Of a DNA stretch of 64,000 nt, positions 11,866-43,499 are shown one piece after another; the first letter of the stretch is position 1; each line of letters begins with the position of its first letter. Under the pieces are notes generated by a model. The model was given only the letters and a program-made list of their open reading frames with translations. It did no database searches and was not told the origin of the DNA. Where the stretch lies: contig NC_068981.1 in assembly GCF_001194135.2 (NCBI RefSeq), positions 63,503,636 through 63,567,635 of the forward strand, written 5' to 3'. Position numbers and translations under genes: made by a program. Source of the DNA: Octopus bimaculoides (Eukaryota).

Positions 11866-12169
11866 TTAAAACTGATTGCCTGTGTTCAAGTCATAGGCTT
11901 TGTACCAGTAATATTAAAGGAATATCATTATTACCAGCCATATAACTGTATTTTGATGCTGGGACTATAATTTACAAATGTGGCGAATTAATGTTACAGT
12001 AATCTACAATAATTATACTTTTACAATTCTTATTCAAGGTGAGGAAATTAATGCTAACTTTTAAAAAATAAAAAAAAATTATTACATTAAAATATAATTA
12101 ATTAAAGCAAATTTCTGAAATATTTTAATATTTACAATAAATATATCTTCTGCTTTTTATAATTTACTT

Positions 12170-12510
12170 GTTTTAGTAATTGGCGTGCTGTCATGTTGGG
12201 GCACCACCTTGATAGTTTTAGTCGAACGAATCGACCCTAGCACTCTTTTTTAAAGTCTCTATTAATATTTTTCGCCGGACCGCTAAGTTACAAGCATGTA
12301 AACAAGCGAACATTGGTCGCTGAGCGATGGTGGAAGACAAACACACATATGTAGAACGAGCTTCTTCACAATTTTGGTTTATCAAATTCACTTACAAGGT
12401 ATTGCTCGGCCCGTGGCTATGGTAGAAAACTTGCCCAAAGTGCCGCACAGTGGGACTGAACCTAAAACCTTGTGGATTGCAAGGAGTGCTGTTTAACAAT
12501 ACAGCCACAC
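12170..12510 (-). mobile_element. SINE family D (CORE-like, CR1-type tail), diverged full length
   Basis: Aligns to 42368-42741, including acttgcccaaagtgccgcacagtgggactgaacc and the tail catgttggggcaccacc. Confidence 0.8.
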
Positions 12511-12572: not shown

Positions 12573-12791
12573 TATTTCTTTACTACCCACAAGGGGCTAA
12601 ACGTAGAGGGGACAAACAAGGATTAAGTCGATTATATCGACCCCAGTGCGTAACTGGTACTTATTTAATCGACCCCGAAAGGATGAAAGGCAAAGTGGAC
12701 CTCGGCGGTATTTGAACTCAGAACGTAGCGGCAGACGAAATACCGCTAAGCATTTCGCCCGGCGTGCTAACGTTTCTGCCAGCTCACCGCC
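12573..12791 (-). mobile_element. SINE family A (tail type A1), full length, with target site duplication
   Basis: High similarity to 41913-42144. Flanked by attaattatatatgtgt (12556-12572) and attaattatataggtgt (12794-12810). Confidence 0.92.
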
Positions 12792-15290: not shown

Positions 15291-17865
15291 ACAATCAGTA
15301 AGCGTTTTGTGGCTTTTTCAAAAATTTACATTACAGAAATGTCATTTCTGTTTTGCAGTGTTTGTGTGTGAACGTTTATGTGTGCTTAATTAAGTGTACA
15401 TTTGTATGAGTATGTATACGCGTGAATATATGCATATATATGCGAATGCATATGCATGTATGCATATGGGTATGCGTGCACATTTATAATTGAGTGTGTG
15501 TCTATCTGCACGTATATCGCTATATGCGTCCGTTTAAATGATTTTCTGTGTTTTCTTAATATCCCCTTTTATTTCAATGCAATCTATGTGAGCGTGTAAG
15601 TGTATGTGTGTCTATTAATTTTGAACATAATTGCACGTCTGTGTTGTCAGTGTGTGCATATTCCTCTGTGTTTGGGGCTGTGTGTGTGTGTGTGTGCACG
15701 CGTGTGCGTGCGTGCGTGCGTGTGTGTGTATGTGTGTCTAAGAGTAGATATGTACGTTCAGTTTCTTTAGTTAAATACGAGCCAGTTGCTGTATGATGAT
15801 TACTGTTTGACAGTCGGGACTGCTGTTAATGATACAGACCTCTGCAATTGCCAGACAAAGAAGCGCCAGGGTTGCGGAACGAACTGTGATAATCACAGAT
15901 CACCCTCACGTAATGTTGGCAGCAAACGGCACCATAAGTCCATCAAGGACTCATTCTAAACAGTATATTTTATGCAATAATCACCTATTGAGAAGAAGGT
16001 GGTAAGATCAAGAAATTCTTCCTCTGCTAGCGCCACCTGTCTGTCTCAGTTAATACGCCAAGCCGGCTAAACCGGTAGGCAAAACTTCAAACCATCCATC
16101 TATACATCCATACTTCCTTTATCTTGNNNNNNNNNNNNNNNNNNNNNNNNNNNNNNNNNNNNNNNNNNNNNNNNNNNNNNNNNNNNNNNNNNNNNNNNNN
16201 NNNNNNNNNNNNNNNNNNNNNNNNNNNNNNNNNNNNNNNNNNNNNNNNNNNNNNNNNNNNNNNNNNNNNNNNNNNNNNNNNNNNNNNNNNNNNNNNNNNN
16301 NNNNNNNNNNNNNNNNNNNNNNNNNNNNNNNNNNNNNNNNNNNNNNNNNNNNNNNNNNNNNNNNNNNNNNNNNNNNNNNNNNNNNNNNNNNNNNNNNNNN
16401 NNNNNNNNNNNNNNNNNNNNNNNNNNNNNNNNNNNNNNNNNNNNNNNNNNNNNNNNNNNNNNNNNNNNNNNNNNNNNNNNNNNNNNNNNNNNNNNNNNNN
16501 NNNNNNNNNNNNNNNNNNNNNNNNNNNNNNNNNNNNNNNNNNNNNNNNNNNNNNNNNNNNNNNNNNNNNNNNNNNNNNNNNNNNNNNNNNNNNNNNNNNN
16601 NNNNNNNNNNNNNNNNNNNNNNNNNNNNNNNNNNNNNNNNNNNNNNNNNNNNNNNNNNNNNNNNNNNNNNNNNNNNNNNNNNNNNNNNNNNNNNNNNNNN
16701 NNNNNNNNNNNNNNNNNNNNNNNNNNNNNNNNNNCATCCGTGCATTCACCCAGTTAACCACCTTCTCCCCCCTCCTGTCATTCACTGTATGGGACACAAA
16801 CTGATAAATCCTTTTGTTCTCTAGCTTTCGTCTTATAACAACCACTCACTCTTCTTTTTCCTTCCCTCTTCTTCTTTGTCTCCCCAACCACCTTTACCAA
16901 CGCCTCTGCTAACGCCCCGGATCTGGTCGCTTCTGATGAGGTCGACAAAGGTCACACGGCGTGCGTGTTCCTTTATCGGCTATTAGCAATCGCGTGAATG
17001 TTATCTGTCGTTAAGTTGAAGGAATATCTAATGCTAGTAGGATGCTAGTTGCTTATCAATAAACTACCTCCTCAGTGTTAGGTAGGAAAAACTACCTCTG
17101 GCTCCAACAAGTCAGAAAAAGAAGAAAGGAAGAAAGAAGAGAAAGAAAGAAACAAAGGAGGAAGTGAGAAAGCTTACCTGACAGAGGCAATGGCGTGTTT
17201 TCCAGATTGAATCAGAGACATTAAAACAGAGCGGGGACGGAAAATTACATTCTTGGAAAAAATTGAAAGCGTGTTGTAGGATTAATTACTTGTATGTTAT
17301 TATGATCTCTACGTATGCATCTCTGTATGTATGTATGTATGTATGTATGTATGTATGTATGTATGTATGTATGTATGTATCTATCTATCTATCTATGTAT
17401 GTATGTATGTATGTATGTATGTATGTATGTATCTCTCTATCTATGCATGCATGCATGCATGTATGTATGAATGCCTACATACATTTAGGTATGTATGTGT
17501 TTGCATATATGTGCGTACGTATTTATGCATGCATGCATGTATACGTGCATGTTTATCTCTACTCTTGGGAATATGTAGCAGTCTTTTTCTCAAGGTTGTT
17601 TTCTAATAAGCACAAATTTTACCATGGAGATTTTCATTTTCTTAACATTACGTGTCTCCACTTCTGGGTGTGTTTATTGAAGCTGTTTCTTATGAAGGAG
17701 AAAAAAATTGATAAATTTTGTATGTTAGGGGGATTTCTTTAAAAGTTATTCCTGGTATATTACCCAGGTAAATTGTACAACTGTACAGTTTTGGAGTGTC
17801 TTTTATTTTGACTGATCTGAAATCCAAGTTAATACCAACATAAAATTTAGGATATTCTCTTATTC

Positions 17866-18200
17866 TCTGACTTGTTTCAGTCATTTGATTGCGACCATGC
17901 TGGAGCACCGCCTTTAGTCGAATCAAATCAACTCCAGGACTTATTTTTGTAAGCCTAGTACTTATTTTATCGGGCTCTTTTGCCAAACTGCTAAGTTACG
18001 GGGACCTAAACACACCAACATCAGTTGTCAAGCGATGTTGGAGCTACAAACACAAACATATACACACACACATACATACATATATATAGATATATACGAT
18101 GGGTTTCTTTCAGTTTCCGTCTACCAAATCCACTCTCAAGGCTTTGGTCGGCCCGAGGCTATAGTAGAAGACACTTGCCCAAGGTGCCACGCAGTGGGAC
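17866..18200 (-). mobile_element. SINE family D, 5'-truncated
   Basis: Close match to 42368-42741; tail gtttcagtcatttgattgcgaccatgctggagcaccgcc. Confidence 0.92.
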
Positions 18201-18239
18201 AGTTTTAGACTACATCAGTCTAAGAAATAATTTGAATAG

Positions 18240-28879: not shown

Positions 28880-28984
28880 NNNNNNNNNNATATTTATATT
28901 TACATATACTCTTTTATTATTCTTTTATTCTTTCATGCGTTTCAGATATGCGTCTACGGTCATGCTGGAGCACCACCGTAGGTT

Positions 28985-29152
28985 TCCTGACGTGGGTGTG
29001 TAATCAGTCAGTTTGTGCCAGCCACGAGGCCAGACATCCCTGAAAGTTTTGTCCGAATCCATCCAGCAGTTCTTGAGATATTTTGTCCACGGACAAACAA
29101 ACAAACACGACTGAAAACAATACCTCCGCCTTAGCGAAGGCGGAGGTAATAA
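28985..29152 (+). mobile_element. Probable 3' end of a non-autonomous Helentron-type (HINE-like) element
   Basis: (ACAA)n-cacgactgaaaacaa, then a 10 bp perfect hairpin tacctccgcc/ggcggaggta (29121-29148) ending in ataa. Family assignment is from memory. Confidence 0.5.
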
Positions 29153-30049
29153 GTAGAAGAATACAAATATATAAAAAAAAAAAAGTCAAGGGAGGTAACT
29201 GCAATGCAATTCCGTCACACGATCCAGTCAATGGGCGTATATTTTCGACGAATTTCCTAGTGACCGAGAAAAACATCCACGTGCTAGTGATCGCCACGTG
29301 TATGATTAATTTATCTTGTGATAACTTTGTTGGCCACCAGTTATTAAACTTAATTCATCATCGAAACCTATGGAGAGGCTGAATATAATGACTGATGACA
29401 AAGTTCCAATTTACCCATTCATTTAACAAGCATTTTATTTTTCATTTGTAATTTTGTTTCTCGCTACTCCCATTCTATTTGAATAGTAACCACAGAAAAC
29501 ATCTCCGTCTGAATGTACGTTCTCTCCTATTTTTAGCTATTTGAAGTCTCTCTGCTGGGTGGGAGCAGATTTCTAGCAAAGATTCAAAACTCCAATCGTA
29601 TATATATATGCTCCATCGCCGAAATTTTAGACTTTTACTCATTCTCACCGCAAGCCTACTTATTCATTCTACTACTCAGTTAAGCATGTAAATTAAGCAT
29701 AAGATTAACTTTTAATTTTTTGTAATTATCTTCCCTTTTTTGTGAGAGAGAGTCTCTAACGATTATCAGCAGATTTTAGCTTTTCTTCCCTTATATTTAA
29801 GGTCATAGTAATGTCAGTTGTTAGCAGTGTGGGTGTGGTTATGGTTGAAGTGATAGTACTGCTGTTGGTGTTGTGATGGTAGTGGTAGTGGTGATAATGA
29901 TGGTTATGGTTACCGAGTGGAAATTTCAAAGAATTGGAAAAATCTTTTGCACAAGGCTTCATCACATCTACATTCAATTTATCATTCCATTTTCAGCGGC
30001 TTCACCATCGTTACTTTGTACATTAAATCATTATGTATGCAAAATCATT

Positions 30050-30233: not shown

Positions 30234-30329
30234 TTACTATGTACATATGAAATTCATTATCTAATGAAGCAAGAATATTGTTTATCAATTTACCGATATT
30301 TTATTTATCATTTTGTTTTTCTTTTACTT

Positions 30330-30650
30330 TTTCAGTGATTAGATTGCAGCCATGCTGGAACACCAACTTGGAGGGTTTAAGTATAACAAATCGATACCAA
30401 TACTTGTTTTTAAGCCTAGTATTTATTCCGTACATTCTTTTACCAAAGTTCTAAGTTATGCAGACGCAAACGAACCAACACCAGTTACGAATCGGTTGAG
30501 GGGACAAACACAGGCGCATAGTCACATACAGACATATCTATACTCGATGGTCTTCCGTTTACCAAATTCACTGAGAAGGTATTGCTTTACCCGTGGCTAT
30601 AATAGCAGAAACTTGCCCAAGGTACCGATCAAAGGGACTGAACCTGACAC
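30330..30650 (-). mobile_element. SINE family D, diverged
   Basis: Tail gcagccatgctggaacacc and centre acttgcccaaggtaccg. A further D-like fragment lies at about 30735-30880. Confidence 0.78.
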
Positions 30651-32552: not shown

Positions 32553-32761
32553 TTTTACTGAAGGAACAAGGCCTTGAAATTTTGGTGGAGGGACCTAGAG
32601 GATTACATCGACCCGGTGTCTCACTGGTACTTAATTTATCGACCTCGAAAGGATGAAAGGCAAATTCAACCTCAACGGAATTTGAACTCAGAACGCAGTG
32701 ACGGGCGAAATACTGCTAAGCATTTCGCCCGGCGTGCTAACGATTCTGCCTGCTCACCACC
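32553..32761 (-). mobile_element. SINE family A (A2 tail), full length
   Basis: Aligns to the other A copies. Confidence 0.9.
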
Positions 32762-32867: not shown

Positions 32868-33106
32868 ATATATCTTTTATCTTTTACTTGTTTCAGTCAT
32901 GAAACTTCGGCCATGCTGGGGCACCGCCTTGAAGAATTTTTAGTCGAATGAATCAATCCCAATACTTTATTTTTTAAGCTTAGTACTTATCCTATCGATC
33001 ACTTTGCCGAACCTCTAAGTTACGGAAACTTAAACACGCCATTCAAAGTCGTCAAGCAGTGGTGGGGTACAAACATAGACACAAAGACATACACGCATAT
33101 ATATAA
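32868..33106 (-). mobile_element. SINE family D, 3' half, runs into a gap
   Basis: Tail gtttcagtcat...ggccatgctggggcaccgcc. Confidence 0.85.
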
Positions 33107-35601: not shown

Positions 35602-36284
35602 TGATGTGTGTGTGTGTGTGTGTGTGTAAATGTGTGCATATTTGTGTGTGTGATTGGTTGATCTGCAAAAATAAAATTATCATAACGCACAACATGTAAG
35701 CATGCGCAGACTGCAATTACGTAGAAATAGCACTAAATCGTTCGGACAAATGTATACATACACTCATGTACACATACGCATATATAAATATGCGCGTGCG
35801 CGTGCGCGCGCGTGTGTGTGTGTGTGTGTACGAGTAATTGAACAAACGAAAGAACACAGTGAATTGGAATTATATGTAGCTTACAACAATTTGCCTTAGA
35901 CCAACATTACTTAATATTTCGTGAGCTTCGAGCACACTCGTATCATCAGATGCTTGGCGAAATGCAGAGAGTTTCGAAGAAACTTATAACTGAATGTATA
36001 TAGGCGTTCAATAGGCGGTTAAATCTACGTGGCTGTTTTAGATATCATAGCGACATCAATTCTTTTAGTGACAGACCCACGTGGGAAAGCGTACACGATG
36101 TTGGTATAACTTAACATTTTGCAGAGTGTGATATTAATCTCAATGTCATCTATTTTTGATTTGGCGTATTACACGTAGAGCAGACATGATGTTGGCGTCA
36201 ATTAATCATCATTCTGTGGAATGTGGTATTCCAGCGACAACAGTTACTAATTGTGATTTAAAAAAAAAAAAAATTTTTTTTATA

Positions 36285-36890
36285 GTTTCAGCTTAGAGCT
36301 GCGGCCATGCTGATGCACCGCCGTGTTGCTACACTGTTATTACAGGGAGCCTCTTACAATTTGTGGCACTTGGTGAAGAATGGAGTTTGATTTAGCAACC
36401 CTGATTTGCACCTCCTGCCGCGAGGTAGGTTCATCTGGGACTCTCGACAGGAAGAGGTCCAGCTTTGATTTAAAAACCCCTACATCTACTTTGTGCATGT
36501 TCATCAGGCTCTTTGGGAGAATATTAAAAAGCTGTGGTCCCCTGAAACCCAAACTGTTGCAGTAACTGGTCCTGAAGCGCGATGGCATTGCTGGGATCTT
36601 TGGCACTATGCAGTGTCGTCCCGTTCTAGCATTGGTGTAGCTTTCAATGCCAAAATTTGACACAATTCCTTCCAGGATCTTCCAGATGTATATTACTGCA
36701 TACCTCTCCCGCCTTCTCTCCAGGGAGTAGAGTCTTAGCTGTTTCAGCCTTTCCCAGTAGCTGAGCAGTTGCAAAGAGACAATCTTCTTTGTGAATCTTC
36801 TCTGGATTGCTTCAAGGTCTGCTGTTAATTTGACACTGCTGGGTGACCACAGCTGTGAGCAGTAATCCAGGCGGCTGAGGACGGTAATCC
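36285..36890 (-). mobile_element. CR1-type LINE 3' end (ORF2 C-terminus plus 3' UTR), 5'-truncated
   Basis: Frame reads VLSRLDYCSQLWSP...LEAIQRRFTKKI...LSYWERLKQLRLYSLERRRERY...SKLDLFLSRVPDEP with stop at 36340-36342. A short UTR and A-rich tail follow. Confidence 0.92.
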
Positions 36891-37129
36891 ATTTGATAAT
36901 GAGTGGGTTGCATATGAGTTTGCATGAGCAGAATGAGTGAGTAATCTCTGTTCATGTTGTAACCTCTGTGGGCAACAGGGAATAATGTACATTACATTCT
37001 ACGTGGGTCAGTTAGGCCTAGAATGGTATGTATATCTGTTAAGTAGTGTGTAATGGCATGAAAGTTTTTCACACATGTTTAAGAGGTGAGTTTTCTCCCG
37101 GGTCTATCTCCGCAGCGGAAGGGTTTCTC

Positions 37130-38230
37130 ACATCCGATTGAACTTGGACGAGCTGTAACATTATTTATAAAAATTTACTGTCGTTGTTTAAGCCTTCTCT
37201 CACAGGAAACCATCAAGGTGCTTGAAAAACTGGTAGTCGGTAGGAGAAAGGTCTGGGGAATAAACTGGGCGAAGAAGAACTTCGTAGCCAAGTTCTCTCT
37301 ACTTTTGGAGTGTCATTAGTGAAACGTGTGGTCGTGCATTGTCATGACGAATGATTGGCCCTCTTTTGTTGACCAGTCTGGGACGGAAAGTAGCAGTTTT
37401 TCGTTCATTTTGGCAATTTCATGGCAATATGTTACTGTAGTAATGGTTTTTCCGGGTTTAAGAAGTTATAGTGGATGAGGACAGCAGTACACCACTAAAC
37501 AGTGACCATAACCTTCTGTTTGAAAAGCTCGGTTTTAGGGAAGGATTTTCGTGCTTAGTTTTCGTCCAACCACTGCGAAGAACGTTTTTTATTATTGTAC
37601 AGAATCCACTTTTCGTAACAAGTTACAATACGGTCGAGAAATGGATTCTGGTTACGAAGAAGCGACGAACGAATTTCATATCTGCGCATTTTCTGATTTT
37701 CATTCAAATCGTGTGGTGCCCGTCTATCAAGCTTTTATGATTTTCCGATCTCATGCAAATAGTTACAAACAGTTTTGCCAGTACTCGAGTGGTTTTACTT
37801 GGATCTTTCTCAATGTTGGTCTTTAATTGACCGTCATCGATGACAGATGGGCGTCCACAACTCTCACGATCTTCAAGGCTCAGGTCTCCACTGCGAAATC
37901 GTTTAAACAATTTTCGAGCTGACCACTCACTGGTCATTTTCTCACTAAACGTTTCATTGATATCGTGAGCAGTTTCAGCTGCTTTACGTCCTTTTTTGAA
38001 GTTGAATAGCAAAATTGCCCGCATATCGAGCTTTGACAGTTCCATTTCAGATGGTTGTAACAACGGTGAAAAAAATATCAAAGTTTATCTATTGATGCAT
38101 TTGAACAACTCTTTGTCTGTACTATCAGACAATTTTTAAAAAAATGTTTTAAAAATTGCAAAACACTGCAAAAATCCGGTACAATCTGTTCAAGGTTCAA
38201 AATGTTGCTTACCTTTTACTCAACCTGATA
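37130..38230 (-). mobile_element. Mariner (Tc1/mariner) transposon, decayed, one TIR retained
   Basis: RAILLFNFKKGRKAAET...KRFRSGDLSLED...GRP helix-turn-helix region, then IVTCYEKWILY and KVMVTV in a shifted frame. TIR tatcaggttgagtaaaaggtaagc with terminal TA at 38229-38230. Stops and frameshifts present. Confidence 0.92.
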
Positions 38231-41912: not shown

Positions 41913-42337
41913 AGGCGGCGAGCTGGCAGAAACGTTAGCACGCCGGGCGAAGTGCTTAGCGATACTTTGACTGCCGTTACGTTCTGAGTTCAAATTCCGC
42001 CGAGGTCAACTTTGCCTTTCATCTTTTCGGGGTCGATAAATTAAGTACCAGTTACGCACTGGGGTCGATGTAATCGACTTAATCCCCTTGTCTGACCTTG
42101 TTTGTCCCCTCTATGTTTAGCCCCTTGTGGGCAATAAAGAAATAAGAAACGTTAGCACGCTGGGCGAAATGCTTAGCAGTATTCCATCTGTCTTTACGTT
42201 CTGGGTTAAAATTCCGCTGAGGTCGACTTTGCCTTTCATCCTTTCGGGGTCGATAAATTAAGTACCAGTTGCTTACTGGAGTCGATGTAATCGACTGGCC
42301 CCCTCCCCGAAAGTTTCGGGCCTGCCTAGAGTAGAAA
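41913..42337 (+). mobile_element. Two tandem SINE A copies with different tails (A1 then A2)
   Basis: 41913-42144 ends with ...ccccttgtgggcaataaagaaata; 42145-42337 ends with ...gggcctgcctagagtagaaa. Confidence 0.92.
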
Positions 42338-42367
42338 TGAATAGTTAGCACAAAGGGCAAAACGCTT

Positions 42368-42741
42368 TTATTTGTTTTAGCCATTTGACTGCAGCCATGC
42401 TGGAGCACCACCTTTAGTCGAACAAATCGACCCCAGGACCTATTCTTTGTAAGCTTTGTACTAATTCTATCGGTCTCTTAATACCGAACTGCAAAGTTAC
42501 GGGGACGTAAACTCAGCAGCATCGGTTGTCAAGCGACGGTGGGGGGACGAACACACACACAAGCACACACATATATACGACGGGCTTCTTTTCGTTTCTG
42601 TCTACCAAATGCACTCACAAGGCTGTGATTTGGTCGGCCCGAGGCTATAGTAGAAGACACTTGCCCAAGGTGCCTCGCAGATCGACTGAACCCGGAACCA
42701 TGTGGTTGGTAAGCAAGCTACTTACCACAGAGTCACGCCTG
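42368..42741 (-). mobile_element. SINE family D, full length
   Basis: tRNA-like head, CORE-like ggcaccttgggcaagtgtcttct, central (TG/TA)n and CR1-like tail. Confidence 0.92.
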
Positions 42742-43499
42742 GTCGACTTCGCCTTTCATCCTTTCGGGTCGATAAATTAAATACTAGTAAATTACTAAGG
42801 GCGATGAAATCAACTGGACTCCTCTCCACAACTGTCAGGCCTAGTGTTTATATTAGAAATGATTCATTTCTAAATGGTACAGCACGCTATCAGTTTGTTC
42901 TTATTTATTGAAACTGCTTTGTCAAGCCTTCAAGAACAACCATGTCCCTTTATTTTTAGGGTCGTTGACAGTAGTGAGAAAAGAGAAAAAATTATCTTCC
43001 AGCCGGAGACCTGACCGAATGCTTGTAACAGTGTGAACTTCACTGAAGTCATCTAGAGACTAGGTGATGGTCTTAAACCAGGCTATGAATCATGTCTATC
43101 TACCACCCAGGGGTACGCAATGAGTAGGAATAAATAGCTAAAAGCGCTTCGTTTGGCACTGTACCAATTCTGTGAATCCGCCGCCCTGGACTGGACGAAA
43201 GACAAAGGGAATTTGATGTTAGAGAGGAGTGAGAGCCGCAGCAAACATCGAACAGTATTTTTGCTTTACACACACTCTGAAACATTTGTCTATTCATTGC
43301 CCATCGCTATTGTTCTTGTAGCCATTTGTGCAATTATTTGCCTTTTTGCCCCAGGTCAACCTGATCGAATAGATCTGTGATTAAGGATGGGCTATCCATG
43401 ATTATTCCGTAATTTTTGTTTTTACAAGTCAGGCTCTGTCTGTCTAAGATTACAATAACTTTCAAATTTTGTCATAAGACCAGCAATTTGATGGGGTGG

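What the first reader, a model, noticed from the sequence alone, without database searches (positions are those of the whole stretch)
36285..36322. SINE D tail is shared with the CR1 LINE 3' UTR, with a compensatorily changed stem-loop
Seen: directly after the CR1 ORF2 stop the UTR reads GGCGGTGCATCAGCATGGCCG-CAGCT-cta-AGCTG-AAAC. SINE D tails (17874-17912, 32890-32928, 42374-42412) give the composite GGCGGTGCTCCAGCATGGCCG-CAGTC-aaat-GACTG-AAAC. The stem differs at two pairs, both compensated. Established: many SINEs borrow the 3' end of a partner LINE, and CR1/L2 reverse transcriptases recognise a 3' stem-loop. Inference: this CR1 family mobilised SINE D, and the hairpin is the recognition signal.
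Basis: partly seen in the sequence, partly recalled or inferred. Interest (0 to 1): 0.75.

Follow-up and report, generated by a model that had tools for sequence, protein, structure and literature searches.

The report
Octopus SINE borrows CR1 LINE tail
An abundant short octopus retrotransposon ends in the same about 40-base, two-hairpin tail as a group of octopus CR1 LINEs, which is the usual sign that those LINEs copy it; this is a clean new example of a well-known arrangement, not a new kind of thing.

Summary
On the minus strand, 17 nt after the stop codon of a 5'-truncated CR1-like ORF2, window 36322-36285 reads GGCGGTGCATCAGCATGGCCG-CAGCT-cta-AGCTG-AAAC. SINE D copies end in GGCGGTGCTCCAGCATGGCC(G/A)-CAGTC-aaat-GACTG-AAAC.

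The tail is not a stray SINE fragment. All six CR1 3' ends of this group that I could reach carry it: the window, O. vulgaris, O. bimaculoides and three octopod contigs found in metagenome assemblies.

The tail forms two hairpins. HP1 is GGY.GUGC-NNCA-GCAU.RCC and HP2 is CAGNN-loop-NNCUG. AAAC and a short tandem repeat follow, an 8-nt unit in most lineages.

Across seven lineage-level sequences 98.8% of cells pair. Three pairs change on both sides, and no shuffle or shifted register comes close. Each sequence also folds this way on its own.

The claim that this particular CR1 family mobilised SINE D is only partly supported. Of the four CR1 families, the window's family is the least like SINE D, in the HP1 loop, the HP2 stem and its A-rich end. 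A relative such as L001 fits better.

SINE/CR1 tail sharing with compensated stems is already published for bivalves and vertebrates. I found no paper describing the octopus pair. This is a new member of a known kind.

The parts
36343..36909 (-). C-terminal coding part of a 5'-truncated CR1-like ORF2 (about 189 codons)
   Evidence: Translation is 65-69% identical to P0001-P0003 and 45-52% identical to hundreds of ORF2 fragments, many with a precomputed RVT_1 domain upstream. A second copy of the same family in O. vulgaris (L130 5215-5800) is 87% identical at the nucleotide level.
36340..36342 (-). ORF2 stop codon TAA (a second TAA follows at 36339-36337)
36323..36339 (-). 17-nt spacer of the 3' UTR, not shared with SINE D
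   Evidence: The spacer is 1, 27 and 46 nt long in L001-L003.
36303..36322 (-). Hairpin 1 of the tail: GGC.GUGC-AUCA-GCAU.GCC (7 pairs, one G-G mismatch, tetraloop NNCA)
   Evidence: Found in the minimum-free-energy fold of each sequence and by RNAalifold. Pair 3:18 occurs as C-G, U-A and U-G among lineages.
36289..36301 (-).
   Evidence: Pairs 25:33 (C-G, U-A, A-U) and 26:32 (C-G, U-A) covary among lineages.
36285..36288 (-). Conserved AAAC after hairpin 2
   Evidence: Identical in all 7 lineage-level sequences.
36274..36284 (-). A-rich 3' terminus of this CR1 family (TATAAAAAAAA); the element ends here and the T14 run beyond it is flank
   Evidence: Similarity to the O. vulgaris copy runs to about 36274 and then stops.
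42362..42739 (-). Full-length SINE D1 copy: head with A and B boxes, CORE-like CCTTGGGCAAGT, internal (TA/TG)n, body, tail 42412-42374
17852..18208 (-). SINE D1 copy, 5'-truncated; tail 17912-17874, then (AGAGAATA)-type repeats
32868..33105 (-). SINE D2 copy (about 10-nt insert before the tail; the 5' part runs into an assembly gap); tail 32928-32890
30316..30626 (-). Old SINE D2 copy; tail 30367-30329
12166..12456 (-). Old SINE D2 copy; tail 12208-12170
28917..29170 (-). Element X: unrelated body, same CR1-type tail (28977-28939) and (AATAAAAG)n repeats

Best explanation
SINE D is a non-autonomous octopus retroposon. Its head carries A and B boxes of the RNA polymerase III promoter type, and its body contains a CORE-like motif. 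Its last about 40 nt plus terminal repeat are the 3' module of a group of octopod CR1-like LINEs.

The module is two adjacent RNA hairpins: HP1 (GGY.GUGC-NNCA-GCAU.RCC) and HP2 (CAGNN-loop of 3-5 nt-NNCUG). AAAC follows, then a short tandem repeat, an 8-nt unit in most lineages.

The likely mechanism is that the CR1 ORF2 protein binds this module on its own transcript. It then starts target-primed reverse transcription at or in the repeat. SINE D RNA presents the same module and is copied in trans.

Selection keeps the stems paired. It leaves the distal two pairs of HP2, one pair of HP1 and the loops free to change, which explains the compensated differences.

Shown here: the shared module, its presence in every CR1 3' end of the group that I sampled, the structure, and the covariation. 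Inferred: binding by the RT, priming on the repeat, and which CR1 family did the work. That family was probably one with UCCA in HP1 and an (RTAAAAGA)n end, like L001, rather than the family in the window.
For: Chance is excluded for the shared 24-mer: 5 matches against 0 in shuffles.

The tail is present in 6 of 6 CR1 3' ends: window 36322, L130 5752 (O. vulgaris, same family, 87% nucleotide identity), L131 20824 (O. bimaculoides, decayed), and L001-L003. These LINE tails are preceded by ORF2 and a spacer, never by SINE body sequence.

L003 carries an octopus repeat in its flank.

The D1 and D2 consensus tails both keep the stem CAGUC/GACUG.

On 7 lineage-level sequences, 98.8% of cells pair and 3 pairs change on both sides. 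None of 500 shuffles reaches the observed covariation score or the observed percentage paired. Shifted registers give 20-45% paired.

RNAalifold predicts the same structure independently. Six of the seven sequences fold to it alone with z = -3.1 to -4.4 and ensemble frequency 0.79-0.98. The single-copy element X keeps the two-hairpin layout but only 4 HP2 pairs, at z = -1.25.

8-nt terminal repeats follow the tail in SINE D, X, L001, L002 and L003.

Ages are compatible. D1 copies are 3-14% from their consensus, and the two copies of the window's CR1 family are 13% apart.

Literature: the same logic is published for bivalve SINEs and CR1-14_CGi (PMC4824008) and for passerine SINEs with a CR1 hairpin plus 8-bp microsatellite (PMC5729268). 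CR1 and SINEs are both among the recently active repeats in O. vulgaris (PMC13282606).
Against: No sampled CR1 tail has the SINE's own HP2 stem (CAGUC/GACUG), so the actual partner family has not been seen.

The sample is small: about 107 kb of Octopus DNA plus three short contigs, giving 7 lineages, two of them single decayed copies.

The structure was derived from the same sequences it was tested on.

Assignment to the CR1 clade rests on the ORF2 C-terminus and the style of the 3' end, not on an RT phylogeny.

ARAGORN and Rfam do not recognise the SINE head as a tRNA.

No experiment on CR1 RNA recognition is cited or done here. The direct evidence I know of is for L2-clade elements.
Confidence: 0.75

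Rival explanations
1. The CR1 family present in the window (stem CAGCU/AGCUG, A-rich end) is itself the family that mobilised SINE D.
For: It carries the full two-hairpin module. Its two copies are about as diverged as D1 copies. If only pairing matters in the distal stem, its RT could accept the SINE.
Against: It is the least similar of four CR1 families to SINE D. Its HP1 loop is AUCA, not UCCA. Two HP2 pairs differ instead of one. The HP2 loop has 3 nt, not 4. Its terminus is TAKA(G)A8, not (RTAAAAGA)n.
Confidence: 0.15
2. The tail next to the ORF2 stop is just a fragment of a SINE D copy that happened to insert beside a truncated LINE.
For: SINE D is dense here, roughly 13 copies in 107 kb, so chance adjacency is conceivable for one locus.
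Against: Five other CR1 3' ends from different loci, species and families have the tail in the same place. Each has its own stem and loop variant, none has the SINE body upstream, and the independent O. vulgaris copy is colinear through spacer, tail and A-run.
Confidence: 0.02
3. The transfer went the other way: a CR1 lineage captured its 3' end from a SINE.
For: Template switching between SINE and LINE RNAs is known, and direction cannot be read from two sequences.
Against: The module occurs in CR1 families only 62-67% identical to the window's in protein. The same layout (HP1 with CCCA loop, HP2, AAAGC, microsatellite) is seen in CR1s at about 50% identity from other marine samples. This indicates the module is older than SINE D.
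Confidence: 0.05
4. The hairpins are conserved for a reason other than RT recognition, such as transcript 3'-end formation or stability, and SINE D is mobilised through something else.
For: Nothing here measures binding. Conservation alone does not identify the ligand.
Against: The module is the only part shared between the LINE, two SINE subfamilies and element X. It sits at the extreme 3' end, where target-primed reverse transcription begins. This matches the stringent-type LINE model.
Confidence: 0.08

Closest known systems
Bivalve BivaV-SINE2 / BivaCORE-SINE1 with CR1-14_CGi of Crassostrea gigas (Nishihara et al. 2016, PMC4824008; also Vhc_1 SINEs, PMC4758252)
   Same: Mollusc SINEs whose 3' tails match a CR1-clade LINE. 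The authors used conserved stem-loops and compensatory changes to argue dependence on the CR1 RT.
   Different: Different class (cephalopod), different SINE and LINE families, and I saw no sequence relationship. Here the tail is resolved into two hairpins plus an 8-nt repeat and is seen in several CR1 families.
Amniote CR1 3' end and CR1-mobilised SINEs (TguSINE1, PittSINE, tortoise Pol III/SINE; PMC5729268, PMC3747384)
   Same: A hairpin proposed as the RT binding site, followed by an 8-bp microsatellite at the very end. tRNA-type SINEs copy that tail.
   Different: The repeat unit here is (RTAAAAGA)n and relatives, not AUUCURUG. There are two hairpins, not one. The window's own CR1 family ends in an A-rich run.
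Eel UnaL2 / UnaSINE1 (L2 clade; Kajikawa and Okada 2002, listed in PMC3747384)
   Same: Stringent-type model: a shared 3' stem-loop plus terminal repeats is needed for mobilisation in trans. This is the experimental basis for the mechanism proposed here (from my knowledge of the literature).
   Different: Different clade and sequence. Rfam finds no match of any curated family, including that one, in the octopus tail.
Octopus CORE-SINEs OR1/OR2 (Ohshima and Okada 1994; cited in PMC4824008, PMC4758252, PMC5804259)
   Same: Octopus tRNA-type SINEs with a CORE domain. SINE D has a CORE-like CCTTGGGCAAGT after its B box, and octopus SINEs are classed as tRNA-Core or tRNA-Deu (PMC8967140).
   Different: I could not obtain the OR1/OR2 sequences, so identity is untested. 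No LINE partner for an octopus SINE appears in the 2013 table of SINE/LINE pairs (PMC3747384).

Membership tests
SINE/LINE pair of the stringent type (SINE with a LINE-derived tail) | The 3' end of the SINE is homologous to the 3' end of the LINE's UTR | tested here: met
   The 24-mer from the SINE consensus matches the LINE with 2 mismatches, with 0 matches expected by chance. The whole 38-40-nt module aligns.
SINE/LINE pair of the stringent type (SINE with a LINE-derived tail) | The tail is a regular part of the LINE family, not a neighbouring insertion | tested here: met
   6 of 6 CR1 3' ends from three Octopus loci and three octopod contigs carry it after ORF2.
SINE/LINE pair of the stringent type (SINE with a LINE-derived tail) | Conserved secondary structure in the shared tail, supported by compensatory changes | tested here: met
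   98.8% of cells paired, 3 pairs changed on both sides, no shuffle or shifted register comes close. RNAalifold and single-sequence folds agree. The sample is small (7 lineages).
SINE/LINE pair of the stringent type (SINE with a LINE-derived tail) | The same terminal short tandem repeat in SINE and partner LINE | tested here: inconclusive
   SINE D and L001 both end in (RTAAAAGA)n. The window's CR1 family ends in TAKA(G)A8 instead.
SINE/LINE pair of the stringent type (SINE with a LINE-derived tail) | The LINE machinery mobilises the SINE in trans, dependent on the tail | not testable with these tools
   Needs a retrotransposition assay.
SINE (tRNA-related, pol III transcribed) | Internal A and B boxes or a tRNA-derived head | tested here: inconclusive
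   The head consensus has TGGCTGTGTGG (A-box-like) and GGTTCAGTCCC (B-box-like) at tRNA-like spacing. ARAGORN and Rfam call no tRNA.
CORE-SINE superfamily | The conserved ~60-bp CORE domain downstream of the head | not tested
   Only a 12-nt CCTTGGGCAAGT motif that I recall from the MIR core. No reference CORE sequence was available to align.
CR1 clade of non-LTR retrotransposons | RT and endonuclease phylogeny places the ORF2 in CR1, not L2, Rex1 or others | not tested
   Only the C-terminal about 190 aa survive here. Homologs carry RVT_1. The C-terminal motifs and the hairpin plus 8-nt repeat are CR1-like by my knowledge of the family. Best described as 'CR1-like (CR1/L2 group)'.
Rfam UnaL2 LINE 3' element or any curated RNA family | Match to the covariance model | tested here: not met
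   No relevant hit at E up to 10 in the LINE tail or in a full SINE D copy.

The most novel reading that the evidence does not exclude
The large SINE expansion that sets octopus genomes apart may have been driven, for this major SINE family, by CR1-type LINEs. The signal would be a two-hairpin-plus-microsatellite module that is ancient in protostome CR1s: the same layout appears in CR1s only about 50% identical in protein. RTE elements have drawn most attention in the octopus brain so far. The module would tolerate any Watson-Crick pair at three defined positions, which gives a ready-made specificity code to test.
Probability: 0.45. Interest if true: 0.45.

Novelty: new member of a known kind. 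Interest (0 to 1): 0.3.

Why it matters
SINEs make up about 11-12% of the O. vulgaris genome and roughly 40% of octopus repeat content (PMC13282606, PMC8967140). Most octopus SINE families are still listed as unclassified, and I found no published LINE partner for any of them.

Tying one abundant family to a CR1 tail group has three uses. It tells annotators how to classify the family (tRNA-type head, CR1 tail). It predicts which LINE families must have been active when the SINEs expanded. It also gives a compact, naturally varied RNA module (two hairpins, three covarying pairs, an 8-nt repeat) for testing how CR1 reverse transcriptases choose their templates. As far as I know, that question has been addressed experimentally only for L2-clade elements.

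The principle itself is textbook, so the value lies in annotation and in providing a test system, not in a new concept.

Tried and rejected
1. I scanned the metagenome collection with GGYGGTGCNCCAGCATGRYC. All 120 loci were GC-rich bacterial chance matches with no hairpin or AAAC.

2. I ran a specific gapped pattern on genome contigs and viral contigs. Both gave 0 hits.

3. A second protein search with a profile of the four closest ORF2 fragments found no further close relatives.

4. More distant CR1 relatives (L124-L127, L132) have unrelated 3' UTRs. The exact tail is therefore confined to the closest group.

5. Rfam gave no meaningful hit on the LINE tail or on a whole SINE D copy. ARAGORN found no tRNA in the window or in the SINE head consensus.

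6. A full-text search for five tail and body strings found no paper. The SINEBase supplements and the 2015 octopus genome paper were not available.

7. I considered and rejected three readings: an adjacent SINE fragment, a chance match, and a single-hairpin model. The 'GGCGG...GGCC' block is itself a hairpin with a covarying pair.

Full report
WHAT IS THERE. All the elements lie on the minus strand. Window 36909-36343 encodes the last about 189 codons of a non-LTR retrotransposon ORF2. The stop is TAA at 36342-36340 and a 17-nt spacer follows. Then 36322-36285 reads GGCGGTGCATCAGCATGGCCG CAGCT cta AGCTG AAAC, followed by TATA8 (36284-36274) and unrelated flank. Everything else is exact, including the three SINE coordinates, which a covariance-model search returns unchanged.

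The ORF fragment has hundreds of homologs at 45-52% identity, many with a precomputed RVT_1 domain upstream, and three at 65-69%. I call it CR1-like. The CR1-versus-L2 question was not tested by phylogeny. A Mos1-type mariner remnant abuts its truncated 5' end.

ORGANISM. The mariner ORF is 87% identical to an Octopus vulgaris protein and 68% identical to an O. bimaculoides protein. The window is therefore Octopus DNA. Looking up those two proteins gave 20 kb of O. vulgaris (L130) and 23 kb of O. bimaculoides (L131) for comparison.

SINE D. Copies in the window align over about 375 nt. From 5' to 3' they contain:
- a head with A-box-like TGGCTGTGTGG and B-box-like GGTTCAGTCCC;
- a CORE-like CCTTGGGCAAGT;
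- an internal (TA/TG)n tract;
- a body;
- the tail.

ARAGORN and Rfam do not call the head a tRNA. There are two subfamilies. D1 joins ...CGACTAAA directly to the tail. D2 has an extra roughly 10 nt (..CTTCAA) and a CCCA loop. D1 copies are 3-14% from their consensus and D2 copies 13-25%.

IS IT CHANCE OR A NEIGHBOURING SINE FRAGMENT? The SINE-derived 24-mer matches the LINE tail with 2 mismatches, with no match in 100 shuffles. They do not.
- The three closest ORF2 homologs sit on short contigs from metagenome assemblies (L001-L003). Each has the tail 1, 27 or 46 nt after its stop. L003's flank carries a repeat also found twice in the window, so these contigs are octopod DNA.
- O. vulgaris L130 5215-5800 is an independent copy of the window's family. 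It is 87% identical, and the similarity runs through spacer, tail and A-run.
- O. bimaculoides L131 holds an old, decayed CR1 3' end with the same stem type (CAGCT tttg AGCAG).

That makes six of six. None has SINE body sequence upstream.

STRUCTURE. The conserved block before it is itself a hairpin. The model is (((.((((....)))).))).(((((.....)))))....:
- HP1 = GGY.GUGC-NNCA-GCAU.RCC;
- HP2 = CAGNN-(3-5 nt)-NNCUG;
- then AAAC.

Six of the seven lineage sequences fold to exactly this structure on their own. Their z-scores are -3.1 to -4.4 and their ensemble frequencies 0.79-0.98. The single-copy element X keeps the two-hairpin layout but only 4 HP2 pairs (z = -1.25). RNAalifold predicts the same structure.

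I counted pairs on seven lineage-level sequences: four CR1 families, the D1 and D2 consensi, and element X. 98.8% of cells pair and three pairs change on both sides:
- pair 3:18 occurs as C-G, U-A and U-G;
- pair 25:33 occurs as C-G, U-A and A-U;
- pair 26:32 occurs as C-G and U-A.

None of 500 shuffles reaches the observed values, and shifted registers give 20-45% paired. On all 20 individual copies the picture is the same but noisier (89.6% paired), as expected for dead copies.

Three caveats apply. There are only seven lineages. Two of them are single copies. The structure was derived from the same sequences it was tested on.

The commonest LINE stem is CAGCC/GGCUG. The window's family and SINE D each differ from it by one compensated pair, so they differ from each other by two.

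TERMINAL REPEAT. After AAAC, SINE D ends in AAGT(AAAAGART)1-3. Element X and L001 end in (AATAAAAG)n and (ATAAAAGA)n. L002 ends in (ATTAAAAC)2 and L003 in (AATTAAAG)-type repeats. All of these are 8-nt units. A hairpin followed by an 8-bp microsatellite is the signature described for amniote CR1s and the SINEs they mobilise (PMC5729268). The window's CR1 family is the exception, because it ends in TAKA(G)A8.

WHICH LINE MOBILISED THE SINE? By my hand count of the aligned tails, the window's family is about 75% identical to the D1 tail, while L001 and L003 are about 85%. It also differs in the HP1 loop (AUCA against UCCA) and in the terminus. No sampled LINE has the SINE's exact HP2 stem.

A CR1 of this tail group is therefore the best candidate, probably a family like L001. 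The specific claim for the window's family is not supported. Ages are compatible, since the two copies of the window's CR1 family are 13% apart and D1 copies are 3-14% from consensus. With so few copies this says little.

MECHANISM. The explanation is by analogy with stringent-type LINEs. From my knowledge of the literature, the experiments are on L2-clade UnaL2. For CR1 the role is proposed, as cited in PMC5729268. In this model the ORF2 protein binds the two-hairpin module and primes reverse transcription at the repeat. SINE D, D2 and element X present the same module and are copied in trans.

The invariant parts are candidate sequence-specific contacts: the inner HP1 stem, the CA of its loop, the CAG/CUG base of HP2, and AAAC. 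The three covarying pairs need only to pair. None of this binding was tested here.

DEPTH. CR1s at about 50% protein identity from other marine samples keep the same layout. L128 and L129 have an HP1 with a CCCA tetraloop, a second hairpin, AAAGC, and 6-7-nt repeats. L133 has a hairpin, AAAAC, and (ATTAAGG)n. Others (L124-L127) have different UTRs. This favours the direction LINE to SINE.

WHAT IS KNOWN. Tail sharing with stem-loops and compensatory changes is published for bivalve SINEs and CR1-14_CGi (PMC4824008, PMC4758252) and for many vertebrate pairs (PMC3747384). That 2013 table lists no octopus pair. Octopus SINEs are described as tRNA-Core, tRNA-Deu or mostly unclassified (PMC8967140, PMC13282606). 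Work on active octopus LINEs has centred on an RTE element (PMC9115989). No paper in the library contains the tail strings. I could not check Repbase.

VERDICT. This is a real, well-supported instance of a known arrangement.

Noticed in passing
window 28917-29170 (-): Element X has a body unrelated to SINE D, starting with the 24-nt palindrome CCTCCGCCTTCGCTAAGGCGGAGG. It ends in the same CR1-type tail and (AATAAAAG)n repeats. Its HP2 carries an A-U pair where the others have C-G or U-A. There is only one copy in about 107 kb of Octopus DNA.
   Followed up: partly
window 37100-38081 (-): A Mos1-type mariner remnant (HTH_48) lies directly upstream of the truncated CR1. Its ORF is 87% identical to an O. 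vulgaris protein annotated 'SETMAR-like', so that annotated gene is probably a transposon remnant.
   Followed up: partly
window 32600-32760 (-), 42150-42330 (+), 42746-42840 (-): A second abundant SINE family (..GGTCGATAAATTAAGTACCAG..) has a different 3' end. One copy lies immediately 5' of the full-length SINE D copy at 42739.
   Followed up: no
L128 1810-1920, L129 1601-1675, L133 862-935: CR1 relatives at about 50% protein identity from marine metagenomes keep the layout of hairpin(s), then AAAC or AAAGC, then a 6-7-nt microsatellite. L128 and L129 even keep a first hairpin with a CCCA tetraloop.
   Followed up: partly
L001, L002, L003 (ENA metagenome assemblies): These 'metagenome' contigs are octopod nuclear DNA. 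L003 671-707 is 92-95% identical to a repeat at window 12573-12609 and 42108-42144. This is host or prey DNA in metagenome assemblies.
   Followed up: partly
L130 8962-9000 (-) and 9062-9118 (+): Two CR1-type tails lie in inverted orientation about 60 nt apart in O. vulgaris. Their origin is unexplained.
   Followed up: no
whole window: 6675 N (about 10%) in many assembly gaps, usually next to (TA)n, (TG)n or (TATG)n microsatellites. No host-gene ORF is evident; the window is almost entirely repeats.
   Followed up: no
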